Shown here piece after piece: positions 1,951-24,445 of a stretch of 25,722 bases of DNA (positions are counted from its first letter, which is position 1; each line of letters begins with the position of its first letter). A program made the position numbers and the translations under genes. The notes under the pieces are model-generated. The model did no database searches and had not been told where the DNA came from. It saw only the letters and a program-made list of their open reading frames with translations. This stretch comes from Octopus sinensis (Eukaryota), in NCBI RefSeq assembly GCF_006345805.1, contig NW_021836007.1, positions 1-25,722 of the forward strand, in the 5' to 3' direction.

Positions 1951-2379
1951 TTGTAAACCGAAACTTTTTCCATTCTTTTAAATTAATGCTCTACACGCAT
2001 AGTCTACAATGTTTTTCGGATAACCACAAATGAATACAAGCTTGTGTGGGTCCTTCGAGATTGATTGAATAGCAGTGATGTTCATAGAATTTTCACACAA
2101 CACCGTTTCATATTTGTACCGATCATGTTTTGAATGAGCGAATTATTCCCATGTCAAGCGGTTGAAACAGCGGAGTAGTATTTTTAGGCAAATATAAAAA
2201 ATTTATATTGGAATAATCATCTGCTTTATAGCATCCTGCATTATCCAAAATTAATAAAATATGTCTGTTATTCTCTTTCATTTGTTCATTTATCACATAT
2301 AACCATGCATTAAAAATATAACTTGTCATCCAAGCATTTTTTGAAGACGTAAAGACTAATTATTTATCAATTGAACTAA

Positions 2380-2984: not shown

Positions 2985-4317
2985 CAGAGGTTTCCAAATG
3001 GGGAGGCGCGCCTCCCTAGGGAGGCGTTGACTCGTGTCAAGGGAGGCGCGAAAGTATTTCAGAACATTTTTTAGAAAAATATATCTATGTAAAAAACGTG
3101 ACTATATCCGATAATAAGAGTTATTAATTTAAAAATTATATTTTTTCAAAAATTTATTTAATTTATTAGACAATTAATAATTTTAACACATGAATAAATT
3201 CTTGAGTGGTTGCAAAAGAAAATTCACGATATAATAAAGATTTTGACGATGGTTCAAAAAATCAAAATGATTGGAATATAATCAATACCACTCCAAGACA
3301 AGAAAATACTTTCCATCTTACTTATTGTTAGGATTCACACGTATCTTTGTTGATTCTATGGAAAAACCCCTCTGTTTGCTTTGCCTCAAAACACTTGCAG
3401 CAGATAGTATGAGGCCATGCAAATTAAGAAGACATTTTGAAACGATGCATTCTGAACATGTCCATAAGTCTGAAGAATTTTTTAAAAGAAAATTAGAAGA
3501 GTTTGATAACCAAACGAAATCGTTAAAAAAACTTGTTTCTGTCTCTTCAAATGCTTTACTAGCATCGTACAAAGTTTCTTACAGGATTGCAAAATGCAAG
3601 AAACCGCACAATATCGGAGAAACTCTAGTTTTGCCAGCAGCTATCGATATGGTTGAAGCAATGTTTGGCGAATCCTATGCAAAACAATTACAGCAAATAC
3701 CGCTTGCTGATAACACAGTCGCTAGAGAATTGATGACATATCTGAAGATCTTTGTGATCAGTTGGTTTCTCGACTACGTAACTGTAAATTTGCTATACAA
3801 GTTGATGAGGAGCTGACATAAATAAAAATGCACATTTAATTGCATATGTCAGATATGCTGAAGAAAGTACAATAATAGAAGATCTATTATTCTGCAAACA
3901 TTTCCGGAAGGAGCACGGCCAATGAAATTTTTAATATAATTGATACTTTTTTTGAAGAAAATAACATAGAATGGATCAATTGTGTTGGACTTTGTACAGA
4001 CGGAGCACAGTCAATGTCAGGAAATAAATCTGGTCTTCAAGCTCTTGTAAAAAACAGAGCACCAGAAATTATCTGGACGCACTGCATGCTGCACAGATCA
4101 GCACTTGTCTCAAAGAATATGAGTCCAGAACTGAACGATATTTTTGCGCAAATTACAAAAGTTATAAACTACATAAAAATTATCTCATTAACTTTTTGTT
4201 TTAAAAAATTGTTTTTGATAAAATAATAATTGTATTATATTATGGAATATAAAGGGAGGCGCAAGATTGTACTTTTTCTCTAAGGGAGGCGCGTAAAAAA
4301 AAGCTTGGAAACCTCTG
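2985..4317 (+). mobile_element. hAT (Buster/Charlie-type, ZBED5/SCAND3-like) transposon, internally deleted (1333 bp)
   Basis: 13-bp TIR CAGAGGTTTCCAA at both ends, perfect 8-bp TSD TCTTAATC (2977-2984, 4318-4325) and subterminal GGGAGGCGC repeats. Confidence 0.93.
3190..4200 (+). pseudogene. Buster-type hAT transposase pseudogene (BED-like zinc finger and N-half of the catalytic domain)
   Basis: KPLCLLCLKTLAADSMRPCKLRRHFETMH, KKPHNIGETLVLPAA, CTDGAQSMSG, WTHCMLHRSAL. Several frameshifts and stops; the C-terminal half is deleted. Confidence 0.88.
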
Positions 4318-4994: not shown

Positions 4995-7900
4995 TTAGTC
5001 GGCCAATTGGCAAAATAGAGCTGCCCCTCGCTGTATCCAGTGACTGTCCTTTTGGTCAGTGGGAAGGTTGACTGCCACAATAAAGTTAGTAGAATGACCT
5101 ATTGTTCTAGAATAAATATAAACCAGTAGTTGAGAGGACTCCTGATCTCTGCGTGGTTTTATAGAGAGGGGCTATGTAATCGTGGCTTGGAGGAGTGAAG
5201 TTCTGTGTGGGTAAGACGTGGATGACAGGCATAATGGAGGACATTTCCCTGTAGTTCATCTCGTCCATTTGACCCTGGTCACTCCATCGAAGCCTTGGGT
5301 GTAAAGTCCGTGAATGAGAGCGCCGTCTTCAATGTCTTGAATCTATGGAGTAGTGACTAAGACTAACTTGAGTATCGACTGACAATGGTTGGCCAATTTG
5401 CGAGTCCTGATCTCTTCTGCGAGGTTTGATTGGTGGATGTATTGGGGAAGAGGTTGAAACTAAAGGAAGAGTGTCAATGGGGAGTTGATATTTGCGGGAA
5501 TAGTTCTGTAACACGGCAGTGAGGAAGCCTGATAGAGTGAGTTGTGTCAACCTTGGGGGAAGAACAAGGCAGGTATCCAAAAAGATTTAGGAGTGCCATT
5601 TTTAATCCAAAAATTGAAGAATTCACATCGCATTGTAAGATCGAGAATCCAGGAGGAGAGAGAGTGAAGGGAAGGGTAAGCGACCCTCTCCCATATTGAG
5701 GGGACCTGTTTCATGAAGAATTGATAATTGCCTGGTTTTTCAATAGAGAATTGTAGCACATTTCCAAGTCTTCAGTGAGGACTTGGAATCCTTGGATTGC
5801 TCTCTGCAAGTGATTGAGGGACTTCTGCAAATGATGAGATGATCAGACCTGAATAGTTTCCAGCAGATAGGCCATTTTTTCTATTTCTTGTGATAAGAAA
5901 ATGGCGAGGGAATTGCTCTTGGTCTATTGGATGAGTGGATTGGTCAACCAATGTGTATTCTGCTAGTTTTAGGGGCAATTGTTGTTGAATTGAGTTGATT
6001 AATTCCTCTACGATCTCGTCACTAGTTTGCCCAGTTCCTTTGACCGCAATGTGTGGTTTAATGTTCCTGATGGTCTCTAGCAAGTCGGAGGATTGTGACA
6101 ACTATCGACTGAGAGTGGAAACATACTTGGAATGATATATCTGCATTTTCGTGCATCCCGAATATATTAGGTGAATCTTGCAAAGGGAGACCGTCTAGAA
6201 AATGTTTGTTCTCTTTAAAAATAGGGTCATATTGTCCATTAATGTTCGTATCTTCGAGAATTTGCTGGTTGATAAATCGTTCGAGAATAACTCCCAGACA
6301 GCGCAGATCCCATTGATCAGTGACTCTCCCCCCATAAGTAATCTAGTGATGAATACACGTGACTACCTCTCTGTTTATGTAATTGAGGGAGTGCCAGGGA
6401 ATAGTCCCGCCACTGCATAAGAACGTAGCGTTAAGAAGAGAACATTCGCGGTCAGAATCGGTGAACTCGTACTATTTGTAAAGTAACAATAATCTTACCA
6501 TTATATTCCATCCCAGTGGCCCGTATTTTTTCCGCTCTAATACGACCGCGTGAAACAGACTCAGACTATAGACCAGTTTTCTCCACGTAAGCTCTCCAAT
6601 ACCTCCTTCTTTCTCCTCGAAATATTCCTCGCCTAATTCCCGGAATGACCTCTCCACGTTTGCTCGAATTCCCTTTGGGGCCTCATTTGTCACTTTGACA
6701 CAATTCTGGAGGACTGTCACGGGAAAAAATGGGGCTGGCATGGAGGAAAGGAATAGTCGGAACGAGTCATTTACACCTTCGGGGTTTTCTTGAATATTCA
6801 GGACAATCTGCTCCAGGCGGGCCATCCACGATTTTGCCAAATGACAATTTTGCAGAAAAACCCAACTCCCATCCTTCAAGGCTGTTTCGATATACTTTTC
6901 TGCCACAGGTCCCTGTCCTTGTCCCAAAGACAAAAAGAGACACCTACCATTTTAATGAGGAGGTGGAGACCTGTCCTGCATTTCATATTCAACGCTCAGC
7001 TTTTGAATGGCCCCGAATGGGTCTGAGCCAGTGCTGAGTACCAAGAGTAGAGGAGTCGTTTTGGAAGTGTGTTGATAAACCGAGGACATGTCGAGTGGTC
7101 TGCTTTGGATGTACTCGTGTCCCAAGTTGTCTCTGATTAAGTTGGAAATCGCGTGAGTCAGCTAAATCAATCGGCTGGAAATAGAGTACTTGATCACGTC
7201 GGCAGACTTTTACGAGCAGGATTTTTTGGAAAGGTGTAACGGACTCCACATGGAATTCATCAAGTTGATTGTCTGTCAGGAATATCTGCCATCGAGAATA
7301 AAATAGACCTTTGAGTCCCCACTGGTCACATATGCACGTGTTTGGGCAAAGCAATTGGCAAGATCCTCGGAAATGATCGACTCAATGTCTCCTCGAATGA
7401 ACAAATCGAGTTCGTGGGATGTGAGGTCATTGCGGGCAAGCATTATTTCGACGCATAACAGAAAAGAAAAAACAAGTTTATGTTTCTCAAACAGTCCCCT
7501 GACTTTAAAAAATAAGAAATACCGAGAAACGTGCAAATAGGCGTCGATGGATATTGCTTGGACAAGACAGTCCAGTCTGGTGTCCCCCGACTCGACACAG
7601 TCCAGAATGGATTGGGAGAAAATCTATTGGTGGTTAATGAAAGCATTTGAAGCCTGTTTGAAGTATTGGAGGGAGAACTGGTACATTGGGTCTACTTTGG
7701 CCATGTCCGCGATGACAAAATACAGAATTGCGCCTCGCTCAGCAACACTTATGTAAACGTCCCGTGCCCGAGTAATCTCTTTTTCGGTTATTTCTGTCTG
7801 GGTGAGACGAGAAGAGATTTGGCTGAATTTGGCCTGAGTAAGAAAATTGAACAACTTTGGATTCGTTGAGAGCAGTGATGAGTTGAGTATTATCGAGGAC

Positions 7901-10900
7901 ATTTCCTTCTGAGTCGTACAAAAGGACGAGGACTCGGTCGATGATTGCCTTAAGTTGATTTCTGTCATTGTTTATTTGAAGGATCAATTCATTCCGGTCT
8001 TGTTCTAGTTTTGGCTTCTCGAGTTGGACGACATGACTATCATTTATCATTGATCTCTTGCCTCAGCAGTTGATCTTGGAGTCCCCCCAGTGTGACTGTA
8101 AAATTGATTACTGTCACTCGTGTGAATAAGTTGGGCTGGTAAACGGGATTGTTCAATTTTGTGGTCATGTAAAGTCGGAAATGAGGGTCGTACTCCACAT
8201 CTCGGTCCCCTAGTGTGATCACCCCGTCCTATCAATTAAAGTCATCGCTCACTCTCTTCTCGAGGACTGAGTAAAGAAGAGGGTCCACTGACTCTCCCAC
8301 ATCCTCGATCAACAAAGGCACCCCAATTCGAATTGCGTTCTCTAATGTCCTCGCAAAATGCTTGTCCGTCATTTTAATAACTTTAAGGTCATTGGCAGCC
8401 TCCATGCTTCTTATCCACGTGTTGGCCTGTTCTTAAAACAAAGAAGGAGACCTGTCCTTGTGGGTCAATCATTAGTGGCCATCGTTTCCCTTTGGTGGCG
8501 AGGAGTGCGTTCTGAATGGAGACTTGATTGTTGGGAAGTTTGTTGGACGTCCAGTGGCGCACTTGATAGGGTGAGGCAAATATTTGTATTATGTCATAGT
8601 CCTCTGATATCGGTATTCCCTCTCTACGCGCATACTTGACCCATTTCAATATTAGTCTTTCTCGGTAACCAACACTGAATGCACCCACATACGTCACCCA
8701 AGCAGAACACACCATTACATTCCCAACGAGGTCCTCAATCTTTTTTTCCAGTGTCTAAAATTTGACGTTCTCTACCAAACTTTTATTTCGGCCTCCCAGA
8801 TTTCTTTCTCGTCGCCCAGAGCCTCCATTAGCTTGGAAGCGCGTCTCAGTCGACCGGTCGTGGTTGAAATCTGTTTTTCCAAATTTCTCTTTTCAAGGAC
8901 ACTGGCCTCATAGGCATTTTGTAATTCGCTGATTTGTTGTTGGACGTTGCTGAGTTGGGTCTGCTTGGTGTGGAGAACCGTCATGACTTGCTTCAAGTCT
9001 TTTTCGGCCACAGCAAGTCTTGTGTGTTTCAACTAATGTACCTTTCCTTTTTGGGCCGGACAGTTTTGTTTACTTGGGCAAACAAATAAATAGCCCTAAC
9101 CCACATGCATAAAGATTTACAGGCCTAAACCATAAAAAGTGACTTTACTTTTGACACTTTTTCAATCACTTGAGGAGTAAAGTTCTCATTCTCGATGTAT
9201 TTCTTGAGTTTCCGAAGCACTGAATCGTTTATGTTCTCTTTATCGTAGTCGTATAGTTTTCTGATCAAGTTAGTGTCCGACAGCAGTTGCTTTGCGGACG
9301 CCCAGTCGGTTCTAAATCAAAGATTCGAAAAGACTTTAAGTGAAAGAGGACACACACAGCTTCCATGACAGTCTGCACTAATTCGGGTGGGGTTTTGAAT
9401 ACTCTGATTTCTGCAATGTCACTTTTATCGAGTGCGTCGAGGGACTATTTCTCATCATAACAAATTACTTTAATGGCAGCCTCCAGTTCAGGCAGAGCCT
9501 CCTTCAGGTCACGTTGAGCATCCTCCGCTATGGCCTTGGTTTCTTCCGCCTTTACCTTCACCACAGCCTCGTCCTCTAGCACCAGTTTCCGTGTCTAAGC
9601 GTTACTTTCAGATCCTCACAATATCTGCTTTGTCCTGGTCTTCCGACAATTTTTCCATTAACTTTTCAGTTTCCTTTGACTTTTCTTTAAGCACAGGCTC
9701 CAGTTGATGGAGTTGTTTTTCCATTGAAATGACGATTTGGTTAGTTTCTATCAGTTTGGCCAACCCGTTTTTAATCTTTTGATGTTCTCGAGAGAGGTCC
9801 CTTGAAATAATGAAATGCAATTACTCTTTGGTCGTGCTAAGCATAGATGTAAACAAGTTGAGTAATTCGATATAACTGACTGGATTGAGGCAATAATGTC
9901 TTCCCATTTCTTCCTCAAATTTGACTGACATTTTGTGGACACTGCGATGCACTCGAATGCAGCAATCGCACAATTTTCCCTAGACTGTGCTTATTAACAC
10001 AACCATCAAATTTTCGTCTTTCAATTCTATTTTACTGATAAATGAGTGAGCCACTGAGTGCAGTCCCTCATCTTTCCATTCTTCAAACCAGTCAATAATG
10101 CAGCAGTTCACTAAAGATGGAAACATCCTGTAAACAGTCCGAAATTCAGACGCACTCAGTGTAATGACAACGTGCAAATTCCGCCTGAGTAGTGACTATC
10201 ACATTACTACCGCACACGATCGATGAACGACTCATAGACCGCCTCACGACTGTCAGTCAATCCCTCAGATTGACAGCTCATTATAATTTGTTCCACATCC
10301 TCGTCCTCAAATAAGTCGGGCACATGGCCGGAATTCAGAATGTCGTTTATTTCTTGAAGAAAGTCTTTAATTTGATTATCTGCGAGCAGAAAGACGACAT
10401 TCCGGTCATCAATTCCCGCTATTTTGTAAAGTTTTTTGACGTCTTCTCTGAAGGCTGTGGAGTCGTATTTGGGAGTGACTTTGATCTCAAAGCACTCATA
10501 TTCGTAAATTTGTGCGGCCAGTCTGAAATGACTGATCAGTTTGACCTGGTGAAACATTTCTTGCCCGTTCCCCCAACTCCCACGAGGAGTCCATTCCCCC
10601 GTTCTTGGCGAATTATGCGGGCGATTCGTGAAACATGCTGAATAGCGTCTTCAAACAAGATCAAGTCACTTTGATACTGACAGTAGAGAGAACTCTCGTT
10701 AACCTCAGTGAGCATTCTTCTCAGCTTGTTTTTGTCCATTTCCTCGTACTTTCCCCTGTTCATCAAATCACCGTAAATTGGAGGGTTGGTCATGAAAGAC
10801 TACAAATGAATGAGCCAAACACTTCGTAAGTGGAAGAGGTCTGTCGCAAAATAGTTTGAAACAAATTTTGGTCAGTTTGATCGATGAGGCGGTCTTGAAA

Positions 10901-13900
10901 TGCTCTGGTGATTTCATGATAGAAAAGTTTGTAAAGTGATTGGTCGTCGAAGATGGTCTTGACTTGCATGATTCCTGAAACACGTGCAAACTCTTACCTT
11001 GGAAACATCTTGACAAGTCTCTCAGATTGAACGAGTAGTGACACTTGGCAGGGGTCGGGAGCAATTCGTTCTGCATTCTCTGGTAAATTTCGACGGAGGC
11101 CAAAATCACCGAGTCGACTGCCAGTCTGACTTGGTGGGGAAATTCCATAACTTTCAAAATGTTCTAAAGTATACTCATCCAGACCACCTGGAAAATATGT
11201 TTGAGGTTGTGATCTGAGGGAGGGGGGACATTAAGGATGGAAAAATGCCGAGTGAAGCGATTGGTCATGCACCCTTGAGGTCCACAGGCGGCCATCAATG
11301 TCACGTCCTAGAAATATTACAATCCTTCAACTGTGATCCATCGCCAGCTCAGTGATTGCCGATCATATAGTCCTCTCATGTCCTGCAACTGCCTCAACAA
11401 TTCGATTGGAGGCTGGCACCCATAAAGGTCGGGTTTAGGCATGTTTACGTCATCAAGGAAGACCACCATATGCTTCCCTTTCGAAGGCCCTGGAAAATAT
11501 GCTCAATTAGTCACCTAAGATGTTGCGACGGTGTTTTTCAAGTTTAGCTTCAATCATTTGCTGAATGCTGGCACTGCTCGTTTGCGCCGAAAAATTGAGG
11601 GAGAGAGGCAAGACATTTGACTGAGTCCTCAATTGGTGCAATGTGTTCCGTGCAATTACAGACTGGGACATCCATGACTTGGTACCTTGCCAACTCCACT
11701 TTTCCCCACAAACATGACGGGCATTTGGACTGTGATCAACTTATCAGCCAAAAAGCCGTATTTGACAGTATCACTGTTTGGGACAATCATATCGAAGAAC
11801 CCACTGCCCGAATGGAAGGGGGGAATGGCTCGTTCCCAATGCTCCATTTTTCTTGTCTCCGTGTCCACGTAGTAACTCCAGAGATCACCTTGGCCGGGAA
11901 TCTGTTGATTGACAGGAACTACCCTGACGTCGCCGTTCTCTTCAAAGAGTTGTTTAATGAACGTATCAAACACATCCCAGTCAGACTCGACTAAATTCCC
12001 TCCGATAGCCCACAAGTAGCAAAAAACGAAAATTGTGGAAATAACGGTTCGAGAAGGCTCTTTGAGGGGGAAGAGAATAGACTCGATGAGTTTGCAGAGA
12101 GTAGTAACCTTGGCCAAATCACACTACAAATTCTCGACACGTGCAACCTGCCGAATGACCTGGGTGGTCTTGGTGGACACAAAATGAAGACCCTCGTCTA
12201 CATATTTCGTAAATAGTTCGAGAATGTGGTTGAAAGTGGTCTCACTTAGTTTGTTCTTGTGCGACTTCAGCCATCTTTGCACCCACGGAAGCCATCCGAG
12301 ATCTTGTGAATCAACGTAGAGCATTCCACATCTATTTGTCCAAAAAAATTGTCTACCGACTGACAGTTGCAGGCGAGGCGACGGACAGGTCCTCGACTTC
12401 GAAAAGCATACGAATGTTTGGAGTGAGTTTAATACGCTCACTGTTGGGCAGACAAAGCATTTTATTGTCGTCAAGTACAGTGTTCATGTTCTCGATCCAC
12501 GAAGCATCCACAGGTCCGTCGCAGATGACCCAGTGGGGGTTGTTGGCCTGTATTTAATGGCAATGACTTACAGAAACGGCTTTTCTTATTGTCAGGGCCA
12601 TCAGTCCGTCTTTCCATTCCAAAGTCTGTTTGTTCACGCCGCCGTAGAGTTCTTGCATTGAAATGGCTTTCGGGTTGATCACACAAGTCTCCACTGATCC
12701 CACGTGTCCCTCAACTTGTGCCAACGTCTACTCAATGTGACATGTCATTCACTTGGTACAACGTCGTCTTGCCACCACCGGTGGGTCCCACCAGCATTAC
12801 TCCGTGCCTTACCAACATTGTCTCGTACAATTGGACAATTTGCTTGGACTGTGCCTTCACAACACTCAAGTTGTTTTTCTGACAGATATTCCCAATTTCC
12901 TGACTGAACTCTTCGTAGTCGTTTTCACCAACAGTGATTCCTGGAAACAAGTCAAGGACAATGTCCTGGGGGTTAGTTAAACATTCCACCAGAAACAAAT
13001 CCGCGTCTCGTCTCAGAAATTTGGGGAGATTGGCCCCTCGGATTGCCCTGATCAAAACGATGCTTTCATCCTCGTCTGGATTTTGTTGTTTTTGCGAACC
13101 GGCCATGACCAAGACTGATTTGAGGGCTCTCATGCCGAAATCGTAGTGATCCTGCTGTGAGAGTTGCTCCGAACAGAGTTTGTAAAGTTGGACAACTTTG
13201 TTGGAAAGGTATTTAGAGGTTTGGAAGCCTTGCGAGTAGAGAATGACCTCTGCAATGAGCTCTAATATAATAAAGTAATTTGGAAGACTGTAATCGGGGA
13301 CCATCATAGAGAAGGGACGGAAAAGTGCTTTCAAGTTGTCAGGCAATTCTGTACGACCAGCATAGGAAGGATTCATGGTTATAAAAGTGGCACAAGTTGG
13401 GACAAGTTGGACATTTTTTCCTTCAAAGTTGAATGTGGTTAGTTTGGCTGCTTTTGCGTTGCGTATTGTGATGAGTTGTTGGGCAATGACTGAAAGGACT
13501 TGAATATCAATTCGATTGAACTCGTCGAAACAGCACCACGAGCCAGACTGGACAAGACCAGTGAAAAACCGTCCCATGGTCTACATAAATTGATGAATTC
13601 AACTTGATAGTCCAATCCGTCCGAACAATTGAACACAACACAATGCTTTCCCAGTGTCTTGGCCAGGTCTTTGGTGGTTTCGGTCTTTCCGGTGCCAGCA
13701 GGACCAGCTGGTGCCCCGCCAAGGTCGAACTGGAGTGCGCCCATCAAACAAATGTAACAACGGTCCTGAATACAGAAGAGAACATACAGTAAGGGGGGTG
13801 ATCACCAGTCGGGAGGACGCTCCCACATATTCGTAGCCGTATTTATATTCGGAAATAGACATTCGCACAACACAGTCCTCGGCCTCCCAGTAATACCGCA

Positions 13901-16900
13901 GCTGTTTTACCCATGCAAAATCTCCAATGTCAGTGACCTATTTTTACTTGAATATGTTTTACTCTGTCTGCAACAAGTTGACTAACTATGTCTCGGCAGT
14001 GGACATTGATTGTTATAAGTGTGCAGAGAATTTGCTGAAAGAGCTCTGAGTTGGGCTGTCGCACTTGATCAGCCAAATAATTCAATCGGGCTACGCTCGT
14101 TTGCTCAAAATCAGACATTTGTGACCCATTGGATAATATTTGAGAGATGGTCTCACACCAGCATATTTGGGACACTGTCAAGACCACCTGCGAGGGCCAC
14201 GTCTTGACCCACTCCTCAAAGGGTTTTTTGCTGAGGAGTGCCTTCTTGGTGTGATTACGCACACTAATGAGCATGGCCTCTTCTACATTGGACAGCCAAT
14301 CTTCCACGTTTCCACGAGCACGGAGACCCTGTTTGGTCAATTTATGTGACACGAACTTTTCTTAACTTGACCTTTTCGCCTTCGGGAGATATCATGGCAA
14401 GTATGTTAGGAGTGCTTGGTTCGAATTCGAGAGACTTTATTGCGTCGAAACATTTATTCAGATGTGGCTGCACTGCCATGGGGTTTCGAGTCTGAGCCAA
14501 AATGTCCAAAAGTTGATCGTTGGAAAGAAAATAGAACCGCGGAAAAGCCTCTCTTTTTGTTTCCAAGTACTTTTCGAGACATTTGAGAATTTGTTGAAGC
14601 ATTTGATTGTTGTTGGTGAAAGTATCAACCAGTCCTGCTTGTTCGAGGGAATATGGTACCTGCCTGAGTGCATGCTCGAATTGCCAGAGGCACACGATGA
14701 GTCTTCCTCATTATTTCCTTGAACGACTTGTCCACTTTGGAAAAGAGTTTGGACTCCTCGGGAAGCTGTCGTTGTATCTCAGGGGCAGAAAAGATGGATT
14801 CCAAGTACATCCAAGACTTTTGGCATTCGAGCCACTCGTTCTGATCTCCATAATCACTCCACTTACCAGCGTGGCCTCAAAAACTTGGAATTGTTTTTTT
14901 AGTTCTTCTACTCTCGAACTGATCGGGCCCACATTTCTCGAGGAAAGGATACTGGAGACACCCACAATCGAATCATCCAAGAGTTGCTCAATGTCCTCAG
15001 TTCCTCCAAGCACATAAACGTCTCTTTGCTCTTTGTAGACAGGGACGTGGAACTCGGTATGCTTCCACGAGTCCTCGATCTACGATTTTGGGAGTTGAAT
15101 ACTTTTTTGAACATTGACTCGAGTGCGGCTTCGGATGAAGCCTTGGTGGATATTTCCTTAATTTGCTGGTCGTATTCAAAGGCATTGCATTGCTCTAGAC
15201 TGCTGATAGTCATGGATTCAATGTTTATAATTTCATTGATCACGGCCCAGTGCCGTGCTTTCAAGGCCGGGTTTTTCAGGTTCATCAAAACAGGAATTTT
15301 GTACTTAATATAATTCACCTGCTAATACATAAAACTTCATACCCGTTCTTTCAACTGGCTGGTCATTAAATTCGGGGACAGTCCTTTGTCCAGTTTTTGC
15401 ACAATCTTCCAATACTTACCCGTGATCGAGTCAAGTTGGTCTAAGTCGCACTGCTTTAGGTCGACCTACCACTGTTTATCATCAACAAACGTCAATCCAT
15501 GACTGCACCAGGGTTTCCCATTCGTCTATCGAATTCCACAGAATCGTCTTGAGCGAAATTTCCTCTTGTACGTCTTCCAACTCCTCATATGTGGTGACCT
15601 CCAGTTGGAAACGCAGTTGGTGACTCCTGTACAATTCAGTCTTTTCTTTCAGTTCCTCCACACGTGCACCGTGGATTCCCAAACAACTCAGGATCTCTCC
15701 TTATTTCCCGCCGGGTCAAGATTGGATGGATTCTGGAATTAGATATCGACCTACTTGGACACTTTTCTTGATTTCCTTGATTTCTTTGAATAATTCACAT
15801 GTGTCCTTGTCCAGTGAGAGACACAGTTTCCGAATCGTGTCTTGTCGCTCAGCGGACACTTTATCGATGCTGTTACGCACATTATTTATTGTGGGAGTCA
15901 CAGTCTGAGTCGCTCTTACTCACAAACCTGGTAGATCACGTCGTCTTCAGGGGGCGAGGGGACACTGAACTTGGAAATGAGTTCGTACATGTCCCTGATG
16001 ATGTCAATTTCACTTTCCACAAAATCAATCTACGCTTCAAAATGGTCTACAAACTCGTTCTTGTATCTCGTCCAAGAAGAGCAGACTTTGCACAATTTCA
16101 GGTGTATCGCTCGGTCGCATATCCAGACGGAATTGGGCGTCATTGAGACCACTGAGCACTTTGTCGACCATCTGGCGTGCCTGGTTGGGAAGAACGTCGT
16201 GGATGTACTATACGTGCTTTAAGGGTCGTACTTGAATGCACCGATTGGGAGAGGGACATAACTTTTGTTTAAATTCACGAGCATCCACAAGAAGCAAACC
16301 GATAGCACGTTTCTCGACAATACTGATGGCCATTCGGCTTTCAATGTGATGCTTTTCCAATGAAGAAGCCAAGAACTGAACATGTTTGTTAAGAAACGAG
16401 TCAATTCCGAGGGCCTCGTCCATGTTGTAGAACTCAAGGTAACTGGAAAAAGTTTGCGCGTATTTATTGGCTGCTGAGAAGGCCTTTCCAATGCAGTCCT
16501 GCAATACGAGCACGGAAATACCTGTACATCTTTTCTGACTGCTTGCAAGTGTGTATCGTCTTCGAAGATAGCCTTCAAGTTTGGTCCCGTCCCACTCGTC
16601 CTCTCCTCAAATTTATTGTTGATGAAAGGTCTTTTGTTGGTGTGAAGAATTACTTTGTGAATGGGTGAAAATGAGGGTCAGGTAAGAGATTTTCTACTGC
16701 AATCATCGTTTTTGTAAAGTTGTTTCCTATTTCTTCCAATGCAGTCTCAAACGTCTCCAGATTGGGCGAGAATTCAATTTGTCCGTTTTCGAGCAGCATT
16801 TCCACCAGGAAAGAGGGACAGGACTCAATTACTTGGTCAAATGGTTTCTAGCATTGTCATTCCAAGGTACCTTTGCTTGCCTTATATTGACTTGGATTCC

Positions 16901-18355
16901 TGCCTCTTTCAGGCTGAAATATTCTTCCAAGTCCCCACTCACGTCTTGCTTAGTCCGAGTAAAACTGGAAATGATATTGTCGGAAGGAGTGAGGTTTATT
17001 TGGTTGGATAAATAATTTTTGATGGTCTCGATCGAGCGGACCGTGAGAGTGTGAAGTGCATTTGTGATCAAATAGTCCGACAAACAGACGAAACTACATT
17101 CTATTAGTTCACCTAACCATGTCAGTCGCCTGCATTCCTCTCTCTTGGCAGCCTGTTCCGTATAACTTAAATTCTCACAGGCTTCTGCGAATTCAGCCAT
17201 TTCCTCTTCCTCAGAGTCACCTACTTGTGTTATCATTGCGAGGACTGTCGTAGATTTCACGGAATGGATAGTCGTCGGGGTTGAAACCCTTCTCGAGCAG
17301 GGCAGTTCGACAGGCACATTTGATCACGTCAATCACAATGCTTCGGAATTCCTTTAGTTTCTCCTGCATTTGGGCAGTCGACGAAGCGTGGTCTTGCACA
17401 AACTTGTCCAGACTCACTGTTTGGTCGTATGCCAAGTTAGTCAACGTCAGATCACAGATTCGGTAGCTCATTCCTCGAAGACTCAAAAGGGCGGACCGGA
17501 GAGGCTTGATATAAACACTGAAATCTACCGGATTGACCAAGAAAAGAGAGTTTTCTATTTGTTTTTTAGCACTTTTAATCTTTTCGCAGCGAATAGTCCA
17601 ACGCCAGACCATGAATGCCTTCCATCGCTTAAATTGTTGAAAGGTAGGGATCTGATGGACTCGTTTTAATGTACTTTGTGGATAGCACGGAAATGTTTAT
17701 ATTCTTGTTCAAACACATGAAGGTGAGTAAAGTCAACTTCGTCGCCCTGTCTTGTTCGAGTGAAGCCTACTCCACTCATTGTGCAGTAATCCGTCTTTGA
17801 AATCTCCTGATAGTTAGTCACCCTAAAATCGACTGATTCCACTCACTTGAGGTTATAATAGTGATACTCCACACTCGACTTGCTTACTGCTGGGACCAAA
17901 TAGAAGAACCCCACCCACGGGTTCTCACGAATTACCCCAATCGTCTCCAGCAAATTTCTATTTCCCCAGTATTCGTCCATAAACTTCAGTTGTGTCTCGA
18001 TCTTGTTTCGAGGCAAACAAGCCAGTTCTTTCGGTAGCGACACCTCGTACTTGGCCAACACAGCCTACAGTAATCATATTGCTTTACCTTTCGCAATTGT
18101 ATGTTGTCCAGAGATACCTTTTTCACTTTCGCCTTAGTTTTCACCTCCACTTGTCTTTTCTCCCGAATGTAAGACGGTTCTTTCTGCACTCTTCCCAAGA
18201 ATGGCTAGACTTTTTATTTTTTACTCCAACCAGTGGCTCTAGCTGGGGCAGTTTGGGGCATCCCCCTCTCGTTGTCCCACGTACTTTCACCCACGGCAGT
18301 TCGCATGAATCGTTTTTTTCTAATTGTCACTAATCTTAGAAAGCTTACTTCTCAT
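4995..18355 (-). CDS. DNAH6: Axonemal inner-arm dynein heavy chain 6 orthologue, about 3916 aa, 67 exons, 66 introns of 21-30 nt
   Basis: The spliced translation follows vertebrate DNAH6 as I recall it, from N-terminal EPLP..PSYI and [19 protein letters not shown] through AAA1 ([19 protein letters not shown]), AAA2 (GPTGGGKT), AAA3 (GKSGVGKS), AAA4 (GVGGTGK), stalk/[17 protein letters not shown] and SLGQGQGP, to C-terminal [25 protein letters not shown] (4995-4997). Internal check: 13361 nt minus 1615 nt of introns plus 5 restored bases = 11751 = 3917 codons. The start ATG at 18355 is the least certain point (an alternative at 18387 needs one more 20-nt intron). Confidence 0.95.
5706..5731 (-). 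other. GC-AG intron (26 nt)
   Basis: CAG|GCAATTATCAATTCTTCATGAAACAG|GTC; splicing restores NQ-VPSIW (DNAH6 NQVPxLW). Confidence 0.85.
7625..7654 (-). other. GC-AG intron (30 nt)
   Basis: CAG|GCTTCAAATGCTTTCATTAACCACCAATAG|ATT; contains an in-frame TAG; splicing restores YFKQ-IFSQSI. Confidence 0.75.
8037..8061 (-). other. GC-AG intron (25 nt)
   Basis: AG|GCAAGAGATCAATGATAAATGATAG|T; splicing restores [12 protein letters not shown]. Confidence 0.85.
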
Positions 18356-18411
18356 TCTGTAGCTTGGTTACAATACATGAATAACATTTCAATTTTTTTA
18401 GTTATTTAGAG

Positions 18412-19739
18412 CAGGGTTTCCTAAATTTTTTGTTTCGTGACACCCTTTTTTTCACCAAGACCACGCTAAAAACCGAACAAACGTCACGTGATCAACCAGG
18501 GACCTCATCCTCGCTCGGTGATCCTTTCACGAGCCCACACAAGATCGCACTGGGCGGCAGGCTGTTTTTGGCGGAGCATTGGCTGACGGGCCCAGGTTCA
18601 GCTTGATGAGGTCTTCCAGAGAAGCTGGAACCGGCCGTTGGCTATCATGTGACCAACGATCGGTTAATCTGAGGGCCCTTTGTTGGGCCTCCTCGATTCG
18701 CCTCCTGTTGGACCACGATAGCCGCGAACCCCATGATCCGCAAGCGTAGGCAATACAAGGTTCGAAGTACTTGCGGTAGATATTCGGCAGTACCGGGTGC
18801 GACCCGTTTTTCCATATTCCGGATAGAGTTCGTAGTATGTTCAATTTTTGTTCGCATTTGCGAAGGAGGTTGTCCGCATGTGGGGAGAAACAGAGGTGCA
18901 TGTCGAGGGTTACCCCTAGGACCGTCTGACTCCTGCAGAAGGGTACGGATATATTATTCAGCTTTAAGTCGACTGACGTCCTTCCCAATCTTTAAAGAGC
19001 ATCTTTAAAGAGCATGGAAAATGCAGATTCACATAAAATGGTAAGAGAGCATAGACAGACTGGTCTGACGATGATGGATACTGATTTTGTATTTACTCAA
19101 AAAATGAACAATGCTTCAATTCTAAATCTAAAAATTGTTTAACTTTTTTACCAATTCTTTCAATCCGTGATCTGTTGACATTTCAAAAATTTGTTGATAT
19201 TCAGCAGAAGAAATATTTTCCAATTTATTGATCATTATGAAAGGATTCTTAATCTAATCATTATTCACTTTTTTGCCTGGAAAATATTTTTTTAATTCAC
19301 TTTTAATTGCTCCAAATGATCTACTAGTTCACAAATGAAAGTTTAGAAGAAACAAGATAAGCGTTACACAATATTTTGTGACAAAACATACATTCGGCTT
19401 TCGATAAAGCATATTTATCACAGCACTTTGCAAATCCATATAAAGGATATTCGTCCAGCTATTTTCGTTTCTTTATCTTTAATTTTTATACAGACAATGA
19501 TCGTCTTTTGAGTTATTTCAATAAAACGTTTTGTTATTCATTAACTCGAATATAATAAATCTACAAAAAAATACTAAAAAATAACGATAACACTATAGAT
19601 GTCGACACGGAACGTTATTTGTTGAAAATCTATTTATTTGGTCTAACTAAAATAAATTTACTTAAATAATAAAATAATTTTTCGAATTTTTCGCGTCACC
19701 CCTAGTACTAGCCCGCGGTATCCACTTTGAGACACGCCG
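18412..19739 (-). mobile_element. Buster-type hAT element (1328 bp) with a nested LINE fragment
   Basis: Perfect 8-bp TSD ATTTAGAG (18404-18411, 19740-19747). Imperfect TIRs CAGGGTTTCCTAAA / CGGCGTGTCTCAAA (9/14). Minus-strand remnant KKRK*LDEYPLYGF..ECMFCHKILCN..SSKL (~19340-19475) resembles the N-terminal BED-like region of ZBED8/Buster3-type transposases. Confidence 0.8.
18470..18990 (-). pseudogene. 5'-truncated non-LTR retrotransposon fragment (C-terminal RT/thumb region)
   Basis: LGVTLDMHLCFSPHA..KLNILRTLSG..YRKYFEPCIAYACGSW..NRRRIEEAQQRALR is the usual LINE post-RT signature. Visibly more GC-rich than the surrounding DNA. Boundaries approximate. Confidence 0.8.
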
Positions 19740-24062: not shown

Positions 24063-24445
24063 TATCGTTAATAGATACCGAATCCTTGTTCATAGTGTCT
24101 GTAATCAAATTTTAGTTTATATTAATTGTTAATATTTTTGAAAAATCTAAATGCTTCATACACCCCTCGACAAAAAATTTGGTTGTTTAATCTTTCCTGC
24201 TTTTTTTCATTTAAAAACGAATAAATTCATACTTTAAGATCCTTTAGATCTTCTAAAATAATATTTATTTTGTATTTATAATTAAAATAGATTTAAATTT
24301 TAATATTGCAAGAAATTTAAAGCATGTCGGCAATTAGGTTAGTGACAAAAATTGGTTATAAAATTTAAACCGTCAAATTATGCTAGTATTTAGAGATTGA
24401 TCTTAATAAAAAAATATTTTTAGATATAATACTCTCGATTCGTTT

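What the first reader, a model, noticed from the sequence alone, without database searches (positions are those of the whole stretch)
4995..18355. 13.4-kb DNAH6 gene with 66 introns, all only 21-30 nt long
Seen: the hand parse gives lengths 21(1), 22(3), 23(16), 24(18), 25(15), 26(5), 27(4), 28(2), 29(1), 30(1); mean about 24.5 nt; phases 46/8/12. Intron number stays close to that of vertebrate DNAH genes while size has collapsed to near the physical limit of lariat formation. Established: such sizes are known in dicyemid mesozoans, Paramecium, microsporidia and nucleomorphs. Inference: Paramecium is excluded by the standard code, and microsporidia and nucleomorphs lack axonemal dynein. An animal-type DNAH6 N-terminus and animal-type TEs therefore point to a dicyemid or an undescribed intron-miniaturised lineage.
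Basis: partly seen in the sequence, partly recalled or inferred. Interest (0 to 1): 0.72.

Follow-up and report, generated by a model that had tools for sequence, protein, structure and literature searches.

The report
Dynein gene with 65 tiny introns
The window holds a complete animal ciliary-motor gene (DNAH6) cut by 65 real introns of only 21-30 bases at the same positions as the long introns of other animals, a pattern already published for dicyemid parasites, so it is genuine but not new.

Summary
On the minus strand, from ATG 18355 to a TAA ending at 4995, lies a full DNAH6-class dynein heavy chain. Three of them are GC-AG.

- 59 of the 65 must be removed, because they shift the frame or carry an in-frame stop.
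- 56 sit at exactly the alignment column and phase of an intron in abalone, acorn-worm or Trichoplax DNAH6. For abalone alone the figure is 53, against about 0.5 expected by chance.
- The protein falls inside metazoan DNAH6 in 200 of 200 bootstraps. It never pairs with Hydra or deuterostomes, and it often pairs with flatworms.

Published surveys find introns under 30 nt in animals only in dicyemids and in myxobolid myxozoans, which have no cilia. A dicyemid is therefore the best guess for the source, but no dicyemid sequence could be reached to prove it.

New caveats: the reading frame needs two 1-nt corrections (near 15696 and 5291), which means either assembly error or a young pseudogene. 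The phenomenon has been known since 2010. Interest is low.

The parts
4995..18355 (-). DNAH6-class axonemal dynein heavy chain gene, start codon to stop codon: 66 coding exons (median 166 nt), 65 introns, 11,773 coding nt, about 3,924 aa
18353..18355 (-). Putative start codon. The first coding exon is only 7 nt (ATGAGAA), so the 5' end is the least certain part of the model
   Evidence: no other ATG lies in frame upstream of the conserved 'LEPLP..YIRE' N-terminal motif
4995..4997 (-). TAA stop codon after ...FCQLAD
18320..18348 (-). intron 1, 29 nt, phase 1, GT-AG
   Evidence: Retention shifts the frame; no conserved counterpart (variable N-terminus)
18205..18230 (-). intron 2, 26 nt, phase 0, GT-AG
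   Evidence: Shifts frame; same position in Haliotis and Glandiceps
18065..18087 (-). intron 3, 23 nt, phase 0, GT-AG
   Evidence: Shifts frame; lies in the variable N-terminal region, where alignment is poor, with the nearest Haliotis/Glandiceps phase-0 intron about 16 columns away
17823..17846 (-). intron 4, 24 nt, phase 2, GT-AG
   Evidence: In-frame stop; shared with Haliotis, Glandiceps and Trichoplax
17652..17674 (-). intron 5, 23 nt, phase 0
   Evidence: Shifts frame; shared with Haliotis
17505..17528 (-). intron 6, 24 nt, phase 0
   Evidence: In-frame and stop-free; homologs have a gap there; shared with Haliotis and Glandiceps
17221..17245 (-). intron 7, 25 nt, phase 1 (a 40-nt alternative donor at 17260 is not excluded)
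   Evidence: Shifts frame; variable acidic region
17094..17117 (-). intron 8, 24 nt, phase 2
   Evidence: In-frame and stop-free; shared with Haliotis, Glandiceps and Trichoplax
16848..16870 (-). intron 9, 23 nt, phase 0 (a 47-nt alternative acceptor at 16824 is not excluded)
   Evidence: Shifts frame; variable region
16631..16653 (-). intron 10, 23 nt, phase 2
   Evidence: Shifts frame; shared H, G, T
16499..16521 (-). intron 11, 23 nt, phase 0
   Evidence: Shifts frame; shared H, G, T
16208..16231 (-). intron 12, 24 nt, phase 0
   Evidence: In-frame stop; shared H, G, T
16030..16054 (-). intron 13, 25 nt, phase 0
   Evidence: Shifts frame; shared H, G
15905..15927 (-). intron 14, 23 nt, phase 0
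   Evidence: Shifts frame; shared H
15733..15754 (-). intron 15, 22 nt, phase 0
   Evidence: Shifts frame; shared H, G; followed by 12 codons ([12 protein letters not shown]) that match the homolog consensus
15695..15696 (-). Frameshift site 1: one base is missing relative to homologs (…NKE|x|ILSCLG…)
   Evidence: there is no room and no GT..AG for an intron. The only alternative, a 51-nt intron at 15700-15750, deletes 10 conserved residues
15466..15490 (-). intron 16, 25 nt, phase 0
   Evidence: Shifts frame; shared H, G
15319..15342 (-). intron 17, 24 nt, phase 0
   Evidence: In-frame stop; the nearest Haliotis intron is 7 columns away in the same phase
15080..15102 (-). intron 18, 23 nt, phase 0
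   Evidence: Shifts frame; shared H, G
14841..14866 (-). intron 19, 26 nt, phase 0
   Evidence: Shifts frame; shared H, G
14635..14659 (-). intron 20, 25 nt, phase 1
   Evidence: Shifts frame; shared H; replaces a wrong de novo call at 14703-14727
14329..14356 (-). intron 21, 28 nt, phase 0
   Evidence: Shifts frame; shared H
13938..13962 (-). intron 22, 25 nt, phase 0
   Evidence: Shifts frame; shared H
13766..13787 (-). intron 23, 22 nt, phase 0
   Evidence: Shifts frame; shared H, G
13581..13603 (-). intron 24, 23 nt, phase 0
   Evidence: Shifts frame; shared H
13262..13288 (-). intron 25, 27 nt, phase 1
   Evidence: In-frame and stop-free; homolog gap; shared H, G
12966..12989 (-). intron 26, 24 nt, phase 0 (contains ACTAAC)
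   Evidence: In-frame and stop-free; 8-aa insertion relative to all homologs if retained; shared with Glandiceps
12728..12752 (-). intron 27, 25 nt, phase 0
   Evidence: Shifts frame; shared H, G
12548..12571 (-). intron 28, 24 nt, phase 0
   Evidence: In-frame stop; 3 columns from a Haliotis+Glandiceps intron, next to an alignment gap
12332..12356 (-). intron 29, 25 nt, phase 2
   Evidence: Shifts frame; shared H, G
12124..12147 (-). intron 30, 24 nt, phase 0
   Evidence: In-frame stop; shared H, G
11902..11922 (-). intron 31, 21 nt, phase 0 (the shortest)
   Evidence: In-frame and stop-free; 7-aa insertion relative to homologs if retained; shared H, G
11663..11685 (-). intron 32, 23 nt, phase 0
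   Evidence: Shifts frame; shared H, G
11490..11514 (-). intron 33, 25 nt, phase 1
   Evidence: Shifts frame; shared H, G
11308..11331 (-). intron 34, 24 nt, phase 0
   Evidence: In-frame stop; shared H, G
11164..11187 (-). intron 35, 24 nt, phase 0
   Evidence: In-frame stop; shared H, G
10975..10997 (-). intron 36, 23 nt, phase 1
   Evidence: Shifts frame; shared H, G
10800..10822 (-). intron 37, 23 nt, phase 0
   Evidence: Shifts frame; 5 columns from a Haliotis intron, beside a 7-aa gap
10523..10545 (-). intron 38, 23 nt, phase 2
   Evidence: Shifts frame; shared H
10185..10210 (-). intron 39, 26 nt, phase 2
   Evidence: Shifts frame; shared H
9980..10003 (-). intron 40, 24 nt, phase 0
   Evidence: In-frame stop; shared H, G
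9801..9824 (-). intron 41, 24 nt, phase 2
   Evidence: In-frame stop; shared H, G
9595..9619 (-). intron 42, 25 nt, phase 0
   Evidence: Shifts frame; shared H, G
9445..9468 (-). intron 43, 24 nt, phase 0
   Evidence: In-frame stop; shared H
9312..9334 (-). intron 44, 23 nt, phase 2
   Evidence: Shifts frame; shared H, G
9125..9148 (-). intron 45, 24 nt, phase 0
   Evidence: In-frame stop; shared H, G
9019..9041 (-). intron 46, 23 nt, phase 2
   Evidence: Shifts frame; shared H, G
8755..8780 (-). intron 47, 26 nt, phase 0
   Evidence: Shifts frame; shared H, G
8427..8451 (-). intron 48, 25 nt, phase 0
   Evidence: Shifts frame; shared H, G
8229..8252 (-). intron 49, 24 nt, phase 0
   Evidence: In-frame stop; 4 columns from a Haliotis+Glandiceps intron, beside a 6-aa gap
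8037..8061 (-). intron 50, 25 nt, phase 2, GC-AG
   Evidence: Shifts frame; no GT alternative; shared H, G
7834..7855 (-). intron 51, 22 nt, phase 0
   Evidence: Shifts frame; shared H, G
7624..7653 (-). intron 52, 30 nt, phase 0, GC-AG (the longest)
   Evidence: In-frame stop; no GT alternative; shared H
7499..7522 (-). intron 53, 24 nt, phase 2
   Evidence: In-frame and stop-free; homolog gap; shared H
7286..7308 (-). intron 54, 23 nt, phase 0
   Evidence: Shifts frame; shared H, G
7162..7189 (-). intron 55, 28 nt, phase 0
   Evidence: Shifts frame; shared H, G
6944..6970 (-). intron 56, 27 nt, phase 2
   Evidence: In-frame stop; shared H
6472..6498 (-). intron 57, 27 nt, phase 0
   Evidence: In-frame stop; shared H, G
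6343..6366 (-). intron 58, 24 nt, phase 0
   Evidence: In-frame stop; shared H, G, T
6102..6126 (-). intron 59, 25 nt, phase 0
   Evidence: Shifts frame; shared with Glandiceps and Trichoplax
5924..5948 (-). intron 60, 25 nt, phase 0
   Evidence: Shifts frame; 4 columns from a Haliotis+Glandiceps intron, beside a 10-aa gap
5825..5848 (-). intron 61, 24 nt, phase 0
   Evidence: In-frame stop; shared H, G, T
5706..5731 (-). intron 62, 26 nt, phase 0, GC-AG
   Evidence: Shifts frame; no GT between the two coding frames; shared with Trichoplax
5529..5551 (-). intron 63, 23 nt, phase 1
   Evidence: Shifts frame; shared H, G, T
5343..5367 (-). intron 64, 25 nt, phase 0
   Evidence: Shifts frame; shared H, G
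5290..5291 (-). Frameshift site 2: one base is missing relative to homologs (…GLYTQG|x|[18 protein letters not shown]…)
   Evidence: The conserved 'GF(K/R)W(D/N)D' motif is readable only in the other frame. The alternative, a poor 23-nt intron at 5260-5282 (GTGACC…ACGAG), removes it
5099..5123 (-). intron 65, 25 nt, phase 1
   Evidence: Shifts frame; shared H, G, T
18118..18144 (-).
   Evidence: It encodes VKTKAKVKK, which aligns with the basic 'P.TKK.R' stretch of homologs, and it has no conserved counterpart
18530..18991 (-). LINE-like reverse-transcriptase tail fragment on the same strand, 175 nt upstream of the ATG
   Evidence: ORF. The LINE reading rests on my recognition of the motif only; Pfam found nothing

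Best explanation
This is the orthologue of DNAH6, the heavy chain of a single-headed inner-arm dynein that powers ciliary beating. It belongs to an animal whose spliceosomal introns have shrunk to about 24 nt.

What is shown:
- The gene keeps 65 introns, and nearly all of them sit at the positions where abalone, acorn worm or Trichoplax have ordinary introns of 70 to 6,000 nt. The miniaturisation therefore came from deletion inside ancestral introns, not from intron loss or gain.
- The introns are AT-richer than the exons (36.5% against 45.4% GC).
- The splice signals are minimal: GT (or GC) usually followed by A, a YAG 3' end, and no polypyrimidine tract. An enriched A lies 17-18 nt from the 5' end and about 8 nt from the 3' end.

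What is inferred:
- That enriched A is the branch point, and the introns are removed by the ordinary U2-type spliceosome recognising each intron as a unit.
- The source organism is most likely a dicyemid mesozoan, whose ciliated outer cells and larvae need axonemal dynein. This is by elimination. It is a fast-evolving metazoan with flatworm-like affinity, introns under 30 nt, an axonemal gene, and AT-rich flanks full of transposon relics.
- The two single-base frame breaks are more likely assembly errors than a dead gene.
For: Gene identity:
- The protein has the full dynein architecture end to end and no DHC_N1 domain.
- PDB DNAH6 chains score 4100-4120 bits against 2470 for DNAH1. Metazoan DNAH6 proteins score 4166 bits against at most 2216 for DNAH7.

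Introns:
- 65 introns of 21-30 nt were found, and 59 of them are obligatory.
- 53 of 65 positions are identical to Haliotis introns, 43 to Glandiceps and 11 to Trichoplax; 56 are shared with at least one. Chance would give 0.4-0.6.
- All three GC-AG introns sit at conserved positions.
- They match the published description of reduced 'GTa'/'AG' signals and weak A residues upstream of AG in D. japonicum (PMC13644364).

Source organism:
- Metazoa plus the window protein is monophyletic in 200/200 NJ bootstraps.
- In quartet tests the window protein pairs with Hydra in 0-4 of 300 replicates whenever Hydra is the candidate partner rather than the outgroup, and with deuterostomes in 0-22 of 300. 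It pairs with Schistosoma in 293-300 and with Macrostomum in 131-254.
- Among 51 animal genomes surveyed, introns under 30 nt occur only in myxobolids and D. japonicum (PMC13644364). Dicyema sp. has a median intron of 27 nt, while the orthonectid Intoshia has 57 nt (PMC6543705).
- The D. japonicum genome is 36.7% GC, 49% repeats with many LINEs, and has a mean exon of 198 nt (PMC6736024). The window is 38.3% GC, has transposon-relic flanks, and has a mean exon of 178 nt.
Against: - No dicyemid, orthonectid or myxobolid DNAH6 or genome could be compared. The best database identity is only 49-50%, so the taxon is inferred and not matched.
- The flatworm pairing may be long-branch attraction. The NJ tree places the window as a basal long branch.
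- No RNA evidence for splicing is available.
- Two 1-nt frameshifts mean that the sequence as given does not encode the full protein.
- No classical YTRAY branch motif is enriched: 15 introns have one, against 15.5 expected.
Confidence: 0.8

Rival explanations
1. The same gene structure, but the source is a myxobolid myxozoan (a parasitic cnidarian), the other animal group known to have 22-27 nt introns.
For: PMC13644364 reports median intron lengths of 22-27 nt in Henneguya, Thelohanellus and Myxobolus, similarly reduced splice signals, and an AT-rich genome (29% GC). The flanks here are 27-35% GC.
Against: - Myxozoans have no cilia, flagella or centrioles at any life stage (my own knowledge), so a complete inner-arm dynein gene is not expected in them.
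- The only myxozoan hit in the protein search is a Henneguya dynein at 33% identity over 27% of the query (P0203).
- The window protein pairs with the cnidarian Hydra in 0-4 of 300 quartet replicates.
- Myxozoan genomes are described as relatively poor in transposable elements (PMC13644364), whereas the flanks here are mostly transposon relics.
Confidence: 0.05
2. The source is an undescribed, or at least unsequenced, ciliated animal lineage that miniaturised its introns independently. It would be neither a dicyemid nor a myxobolid.
For: - No sequence above 50% identity exists in a 5.8-billion-protein database that includes assemblies of public sequencing runs.
- The phylogenetic position inside Metazoa is unresolved.
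- The authors of PMC13644364 expect further such lineages to be found.
Against: - Everything observed fits published dicyemid features: intron size, signals, conserved positions, repeat load, GC content and flatworm affinity.
- The absence of close database hits is equally expected if dicyemid proteomes are simply not in the database.
Confidence: 0.1
3. The locus is a recently inactivated pseudogene. On this reading the two 1-nt deletions are real and the gene no longer makes full-length DNAH6.
For: Two frame breaks lie inside otherwise well-conserved peptide stretches. Neither can be bridged by a plausible intron.
Against: - There are no in-frame stops in 3,924 codons.
- All 65 splice-site pairs are intact, and all four P-loops are present.
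- All Pfam domains match end to end, including across break 2.
- The published D. japonicum assembly merged Illumina contigs with PacBio RS II contigs (PMC6736024), a setting in which single-base indel errors are common (my own knowledge).
- Dicyemids are ciliated (PMC6736024).
Confidence: 0.25
4. The gene comes from a ciliate or another protist with tiny introns, such as Paramecium, Stentor or a nucleomorph.
For: Intron lengths of 15-33 nt are known in those groups (cited in PMC13644364).
Against: - The protein nests in metazoan DNAH6 in 200/200 bootstraps. Protist and fungal dyneins are 35-44% identical against 46-50% for most animals (the fast-evolving fly DNAH6 is 39%), and the only ciliate hit (Paramecium) is at 21%.
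- 53 intron positions are shared with a mollusc.
- There are no in-frame TAA or TAG codons.
Confidence: 0.01

Closest known systems
Dicyemid genes with ultra-short introns (Ogino et al. 2010, Gene 449:70, as cited in PMC6543705; Dicyema japonicum genome, PMC6736024; Dicyema sp., PMC6543705)
   Same: - Introns are mostly under 30 nt (published median 27 nt, two thirds under 30 nt).
- The exon/intron structure is conservative relative to other animals.
- The splice-site consensus is reduced to GTa and AG, with weak A residues upstream of the AG.
- The genome is AT-rich and repeat-rich, with LINEs.
- The animal is ciliated.
- The lineage is a fast-evolving spiralian with flatworm affinity.
   Different: - I could not compare sequences directly, so membership of this genome or species is unproven.
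- The mean here (24.4 nt) is below the published genome-wide means and medians of 27-38 nt.
- The length range in this gene is very tight, with nothing above 30 nt.
Myxobolid myxozoan ultra-short introns (PMC13644364)
   Same: Median lengths of 22-27 nt, conserved intron positions, reduced splice signals, and an A-rich putative branch site.
   Different: Myxobolids are cnidarians without axonemes. The window protein shows no cnidarian affinity and encodes an axonemal motor.
Tiny introns of ciliates and nucleomorphs (Paramecium about 25 nt, Stentor 15-16 nt, Bigelowiella nucleomorph 18-21 nt)
   Same: The same size class and the same intron-definition logic. There is a weak hint that introns whose length is a multiple of 3 tend to carry in-frame stops (17 of 23 against 13 expected, P = 0.06), as reported for Paramecium (my own knowledge).
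   Different: The lineage and the genetic code differ, and those introns are not at metazoan positions.
Haliotis rufescens DNAH6 (P0121, locus L002)
   Same: It is the orthologous protein, 49% identical over its full length. 53 of the window's 65 intron positions and phases are identical to Haliotis introns.
   Different: Haliotis has 76 introns with a median of 571 nt and a 78-kb gene, against 65 introns with a median of 24 nt and a 13.4-kb gene here. The window protein is about 270 aa shorter because of many small deletions.

Membership tests
DNAH6-class axonemal inner-arm dynein heavy chain | Complete dynein motor architecture: linker, AAA1-AAA6, stalk with microtubule-binding domain, and C-terminal domain | tested here: met
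   Pfam finds DHC_N2, AAA_6, AAA_5, AAA_7, AAA_8, MT, AAA_9, Dynein_heavy, AAA_lid_11 and Dynein_C, most of them matched end to end
DNAH6-class axonemal inner-arm dynein heavy chain | Closer to DNAH6 than to any other dynein heavy chain class | tested here: met
   PDB DNAH6 chains score 4100-4120 bits, against 3157 for a Chlamydomonas chain, 2470 for DNAH1 and 2307 for DNAH7. It sits in the DNAH6 clade of the NJ tree
DNAH6-class axonemal inner-arm dynein heavy chain | Short tail without the DHC_N1 domain, as in single-headed inner-arm dyneins | tested here: met
   No PF08385 hit. The DNAH6 homologs also lack it, while DNAH10, DNAH11 and cytoplasmic dyneins have it
DNAH6-class axonemal inner-arm dynein heavy chain | Nucleotide-binding P-loops in AAA1-AAA4 | tested here: met
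   [24 protein letters not shown] and GVGGTGKK are present in the predicted protein
DNAH6-class axonemal inner-arm dynein heavy chain | Uninterrupted reading frame after splicing | tested here: not met
   Two 1-nt frame breaks at about 15695-15696 and 5290-5291. Whether the cause is assembly error or real mutation is undecided
DNAH6-class axonemal inner-arm dynein heavy chain | Location and motor activity in the axoneme | not testable with these tools
   Needs proteomics, cryo-ET or functional assays
Ultra-short spliceosomal introns of the dicyemid type | Length distribution centred below 30 nt | tested here: met
   Range 21-30 nt, median 24, mean 24.4
Ultra-short spliceosomal introns of the dicyemid type | Canonical U2-type termini | tested here: met
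   62 GT-AG and 3 GC-AG
Ultra-short spliceosomal introns of the dicyemid type | Reduced splice-site consensus (GTa … AG), no polypyrimidine tract, weak A residues upstream of the AG | tested here: met
   Position +3 is A in 32 of 65 and nothing further is conserved. Position -3 is T or C in 61 of 65. A peaks at -8 (54%) and at +17/18. This agrees with PMC13644364
Ultra-short spliceosomal introns of the dicyemid type | Positions conserved with orthologous introns of other animals | tested here: met
   56 of 65 are identical in column and phase to Haliotis, Glandiceps or Trichoplax. Chance expectation is about 0.5 for Haliotis
Ultra-short spliceosomal introns of the dicyemid type | Removal from the mRNA | not testable with these tools
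   No transcript data are available
Ultra-short spliceosomal introns of the dicyemid type | Source organism is a dicyemid | tested here: inconclusive
   It is a metazoan (200/200) with flatworm affinity and without cnidarian or deuterostome affinity. No dicyemid sequence was reachable for a direct match
Myxobolid myxozoan ultra-short introns | Cnidarian ancestry of the host gene | tested here: not met
   It pairs with Hydra in 0-4 of 300 quartet replicates. Caveats: only one cnidarian was available, and the methods were distance-based
Ciliate tiny introns (Paramecium type) | Ciliate ancestry and reassigned TAA/TAG codons | tested here: not met
   There are no in-frame stop codons of any kind. 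The protein sits in the metazoan clade. The only ciliate hit, from Paramecium, is at 21% identity

The most novel reading that the evidence does not exclude
The window comes from a ciliated animal lineage that is neither a dicyemid nor a myxobolid. That would make it a third independent origin of introns under 30 nt in Metazoa, one in which intron positions were kept almost completely while length collapsed to a very narrow 21-30 nt band.
Probability: 0.08. Interest if true: 0.6.

Novelty: already known. Interest (0 to 1): 0.22.

Why it matters
As a check on the scan, this is a clean result. A tool-free hand parse of 13 kb recovered essentially the correct 65-intron structure.

Biologically, the gene is a vivid single-gene illustration of a published phenomenon. 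An animal can keep about 85% of the ancestral intron positions of a 76-intron gene while shrinking every intron to about 24 nt with almost no splice-signal information. That is relevant to how the spliceosome defines minimal introns.

It adds nothing categorically new unless the source turns out not to be a dicyemid.

There are two practical lessons:
- Gene finders with the usual minimum intron lengths would shatter this gene.
- A purely statistical model over-calls in-frame GT..AG segments. My de novo model called 68 introns; at least 4 were false in-frame calls and several more had to be moved or replaced. Homology or RNA evidence is therefore needed.

Tried and rejected
1. A dynamic program that minimised intron number without a length limit gave 52 spurious introns of 17-60 nt. 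Limited to 18-34 nt and GT donors only, it found no path, which exposed the first GC-AG intron.

2. A self-trained codon and intron Viterbi model gave 68 introns. Alignment to 11 homologs and the later spliced alignment showed:
 - four false in-frame introns (17747-17770, 10128-10151, 8604-8627, 6537-6560);
 - one misplaced intron (14703-14727);
 - two spurious GC-AG introns (5881-5905 and 5732-5757), replaced by 5924-5948 and 5706-5731, and a shifted call at 11151-11174, replaced by 11164-11187;
 - two missed in-frame introns;
 - two 'introns' (51 nt at 15700-15750 and 23 nt at 5260-5282) that were really patches over frameshifts.

3. A suspected in-frame intron in '[13 protein letters not shown]' (about 5400-5450) was rejected. 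From a hand reading of the DNA there (no call printed that stretch on its own), the only GT..AG is 44 nt and would break the frame, and the spliced alignment kept the stretch as coding.

4. A YTRAY branch-site motif is not enriched.

5. Gene structures for further comparison could not be fetched. Hydra and Ptychodera were not on record, and Lineus, Schistosoma and Opisthorchis genes were over 100 kb. No cnidarian intron map could be made.

6. Literature searches for axonemal dynein or cilia genes in myxozoans returned nothing usable.

7. Rfam, tRNA and tandem-repeat scans of the window found nothing relevant.

8. Programmed -1 frameshifting at the two breaks was considered and rejected. Neither site has a slippery heptamer.

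Full report
**Where and what**

Bases 5,000-19,000 of the window are 41-48% GC, against 27-36% GC in the flanks. The minus strand of that block is covered by short open frames that translate to dynein heavy chain sequence. The longest one (12732-13577) matches DNAH6 chains of solved axonemes best, at 376-384 bits against 301 for DNAH1. The gene therefore runs from right to left in window coordinates.

**Building the gene model**

- Simple dynamic programming that only avoided stop codons was not good enough. It did show that one junction (8037-8061) has no GT donor and must be GC-AG.
- A self-trained codon and intron model reached the stop codon with 68 introns.
- With that draft protein I retrieved full-length homologs. 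The best are metazoan DNAH6 proteins (abalone, acorn worms, scallop, nemertean, snail, lamprey, flukes, Hydra, Trichoplax) at 46-50% identity and 3,760-4,166 bits. DNAH7, DNAH1 and DNAH10 score 2,216 bits or less.
- Aligning the draft to 11 of these homologs exposed the model's errors. Four in-frame 'introns' were really coding. One intron was misplaced. Two in-frame introns had been missed.
- I then wrote a protein-profile-to-genome aligner that allows introns of 15-70 nt in all phases and penalised frameshifts. This gave the final structure for everything downstream of residue 130 or so. It also moved one intron and replaced two spurious GC-AG calls from the draft. The poorly conserved N-terminus keeps three introns from the self-trained model. 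One of these is at a position shared with abalone and acorn worm.

**Result**

- There are 65 introns: 21(1), 22(3), 23(16), 24(18), 25(15), 26(5), 27(3), 28(2), 29(1), 30(1). The mean is 24.4 and the median 24. Phases are 45/8/12. Termini are 62 GT-AG and 3 GC-AG.
The only plausible candidate for it (18118-18144) is in-frame and stop-free, lies in the variable N-terminus, and has no conserved counterpart. I leave it as unproven.
- Exons have a median of 166 nt and 45.4% GC. Introns have 36.5% GC.
- The spliced product is about 3,924 aa with the complete dynein architecture, most Pfam models matched end to end, and no DHC_N1 tail domain. It scores 4,100-4,120 bits against PDB DNAH6 chains, against 2,470 for DNAH1.
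- It is some 230-270 aa shorter than its homologs because of many small deletions, for example 26, 23, 21 and 19 residues.

**Are the introns real?**

- The gene contains 491 GT..AG segments of 21-30 nt, so the motif alone means nothing.
- Of the 65 introns, 42 would shift the frame and 17 carry an in-frame stop if retained. The other six are insertions relative to every homolog.
- The strongest test is position. I mapped the exact exon structure of abalone DNAH6 (76 introns, median 571 nt), acorn-worm DNAH6 (64 mapped, median 437 nt) and Trichoplax DNAH6 (21 introns) from their genomic loci.
- 53 of the window's introns fall in the same alignment column and phase as an abalone intron, 43 match the acorn worm and 11 match Trichoplax. 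56 match at least one. Random placement gives 0.4-0.6 matches to abalone, with a maximum of 5 in 2,000 trials.
- Three of the nine unmatched introns lie 3-4 columns from an intron conserved in both abalone and acorn worm, next to an alignment gap.
- All three GC-AG introns and all six in-frame stop-free introns are at conserved positions.
- These are therefore ancestral animal introns that shrank in place.

**Signals**

- Beyond GT only the +3 A is favoured (32 of 65). The 3' end is YAG in 61 of 65. There is no pyrimidine tract.
- An A is enriched at position 17 of the 23- and 24-nt introns and at position 18 of the 25- and 26-nt introns, which is about -8 from the 3' end (54%). I read this as the branch point, which is an inference.
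- A YTRAY motif is not enriched.

**Two frame breaks**

The homology-guided alignment needs a single-base correction at 15695-15696, just after intron 15, where 12 codons ([12 protein letters not shown]) match the consensus before the frame slips. It needs another at 5290-5291, where the conserved GF(K/R)W(D/N)D motif is readable only in the other frame.

Neither break can be bridged by a credible intron. The de novo model's patches, 51 nt and 23 nt long, delete conserved residues and score poorly. There are no in-frame stops, every splice-site pair is intact, all four P-loops are present, and Dynein_C matches across break 2. I think assembly error is more likely than a pseudogene, at roughly 3 to 1. 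The published D. japonicum assembly merged Illumina and PacBio RS II contigs (PMC6736024). Only reads can decide.

**Whose gene?**

- No protein above 50% identity exists in the database, although it includes assemblies of public sequencing runs. The source cannot be matched directly.
- In an NJ analysis of 3,291 ungapped columns, the window protein plus metazoan DNAH6 is monophyletic in 200 of 200 bootstraps. The window protein is a long branch near the base, next to the fast-evolving fly sequence.
- In quartet tests it pairs with Hydra in 0-4 of 300 replicates whenever Hydra is the candidate partner rather than the outgroup, and with deuterostomes in 0-22 of 300. It pairs with Schistosoma in 293-300 and with Macrostomum in 131-254. 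Otherwise it is pulled to the outgroup. This fits the reported flatworm affinity of dicyemids (abstract of PMC6736024), but it could be long-branch attraction.
- It shares 12 intron positions with abalone that the acorn worm lacks, and only 2 the other way. This is weakly in the same direction.
- The literature says that among 51 animal genomes, introns under 30 nt occur only in myxobolid myxozoans and in D. japonicum (PMC13644364). Dicyema sp. has a median of 27 nt and the orthonectid Intoshia 57 nt (PMC6543705).
- Myxozoans lack cilia (my own knowledge), and the only myxozoan hit is a distant Henneguya dynein. Dicyemids are ciliated (PMC6736024).
- Window GC (38.3%), mean exon size (178 nt) and flanks full of Tc1/mariner, pogo, hAT-like and LINE-like relics fit the D. 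japonicum genome: 36.7% GC, 198-nt mean exon, 49% repeats with abundant LINEs (PMC6736024).
- I put a dicyemid source at about 0.8, an unsequenced intron-miniaturised animal at about 0.1, and a myxobolid at about 0.05.

**Comparison with what is known, and verdict**

Extreme intron shortening with a conservative exon/intron structure in dicyemids was reported in 2010 (Ogino et al., cited in PMC6543705). It was confirmed genome-wide in 2019 and placed in comparative context in 2026 (PMC13644364).

This gene is a striking single example, with 65 conserved-position introns in a band only 10 nt wide, but it is an instance of a known property. One claim, 'near the physical limit', is overstated, because 15-16-nt introns are spliced in Stentor (cited in PMC13644364).

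Novelty: already known. Interest is low unless the source proves not to be a dicyemid.

Noticed in passing
window 24410-25465 (+), insert at 24988-25014: A Tc1/mariner transposase copy reads as one continuous frame (HTH plus DDE_3 domains). It is broken only by one TGA (24749-24751) and by a 27-nt AT-rich GT..AG insert (GTAAATTATGATGTAATAAAAAATTAG) that carries a stop. Removing the insert restores the canonical 'TVK.G.G..M.WGCF' motif. It looks like a host-style ultra-short intron inside a transposon gene.
   Followed up: partly
window 15695-15696 and 5290-5291 (-): The DNAH6 reading frame needs two single-base corrections inside conserved peptide stretches. The cause is either assembly indels or a very young pseudogene. 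No other defect (stop codon or lost splice site) is present.
   Followed up: partly
window 8037-8061, 7624-7653, 5706-5731 (-): Three of the 65 introns (4.6%) use GC-AG, and all three are at positions conserved in other animals. Among 161 mapped introns of the abalone, acorn-worm and Trichoplax orthologs, only 1 is GC-AG.
   Followed up: partly
DNAH6 introns whose length is a multiple of 3 (23 of 65): 17 of these 23 introns carry an in-frame stop, against 13.0 ± 2.3 in shuffled introns (P = 0.06). This recalls the Paramecium pattern, in which retained introns are exposed to nonsense-mediated decay. The sample is small and biased, because stop-free in-frame introns are harder to detect.
   Followed up: partly
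whole DNAH6 protein, e.g. around window 7389, 7246, 17203 and 14422: The protein is about 230-270 aa shorter than its animal orthologs. The difference comes from many small deletions (26, 23, 21, 19, 12, 10 aa and so on), mostly in loops and variable regions, as if coding sequence had been trimmed along with the introns.
   Followed up: no
window 17747-17770, 10128-10151, 8604-8627, 6537-6560 (-): Four in-frame 24-nt GT..AG segments inside exons scored as well as real introns in a self-trained model, yet they encode residues conserved in all homologs. It is unclear how the spliceosome avoids such decoys given the minimal splice signals.
   Followed up: no
window 18530-18991 (-), 22754-23709 (-), 2126-2359 (-), 330-713 (-), 3271-4223 (+): Both flanks are AT-rich and consist largely of decayed transposon pieces:
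- a LINE-like reverse-transcriptase tail 175 nt upstream of the ATG, on the same strand (my reading of the motif; no Pfam hit);
- a Sleeping-Beauty-like Tc1 copy with several stops;
- a pogo DDE_1 fragment;
- weak hAT-like pieces.
No second cellular gene, tRNA or Rfam RNA was found in the 25.7-kb window.
   Followed up: partly
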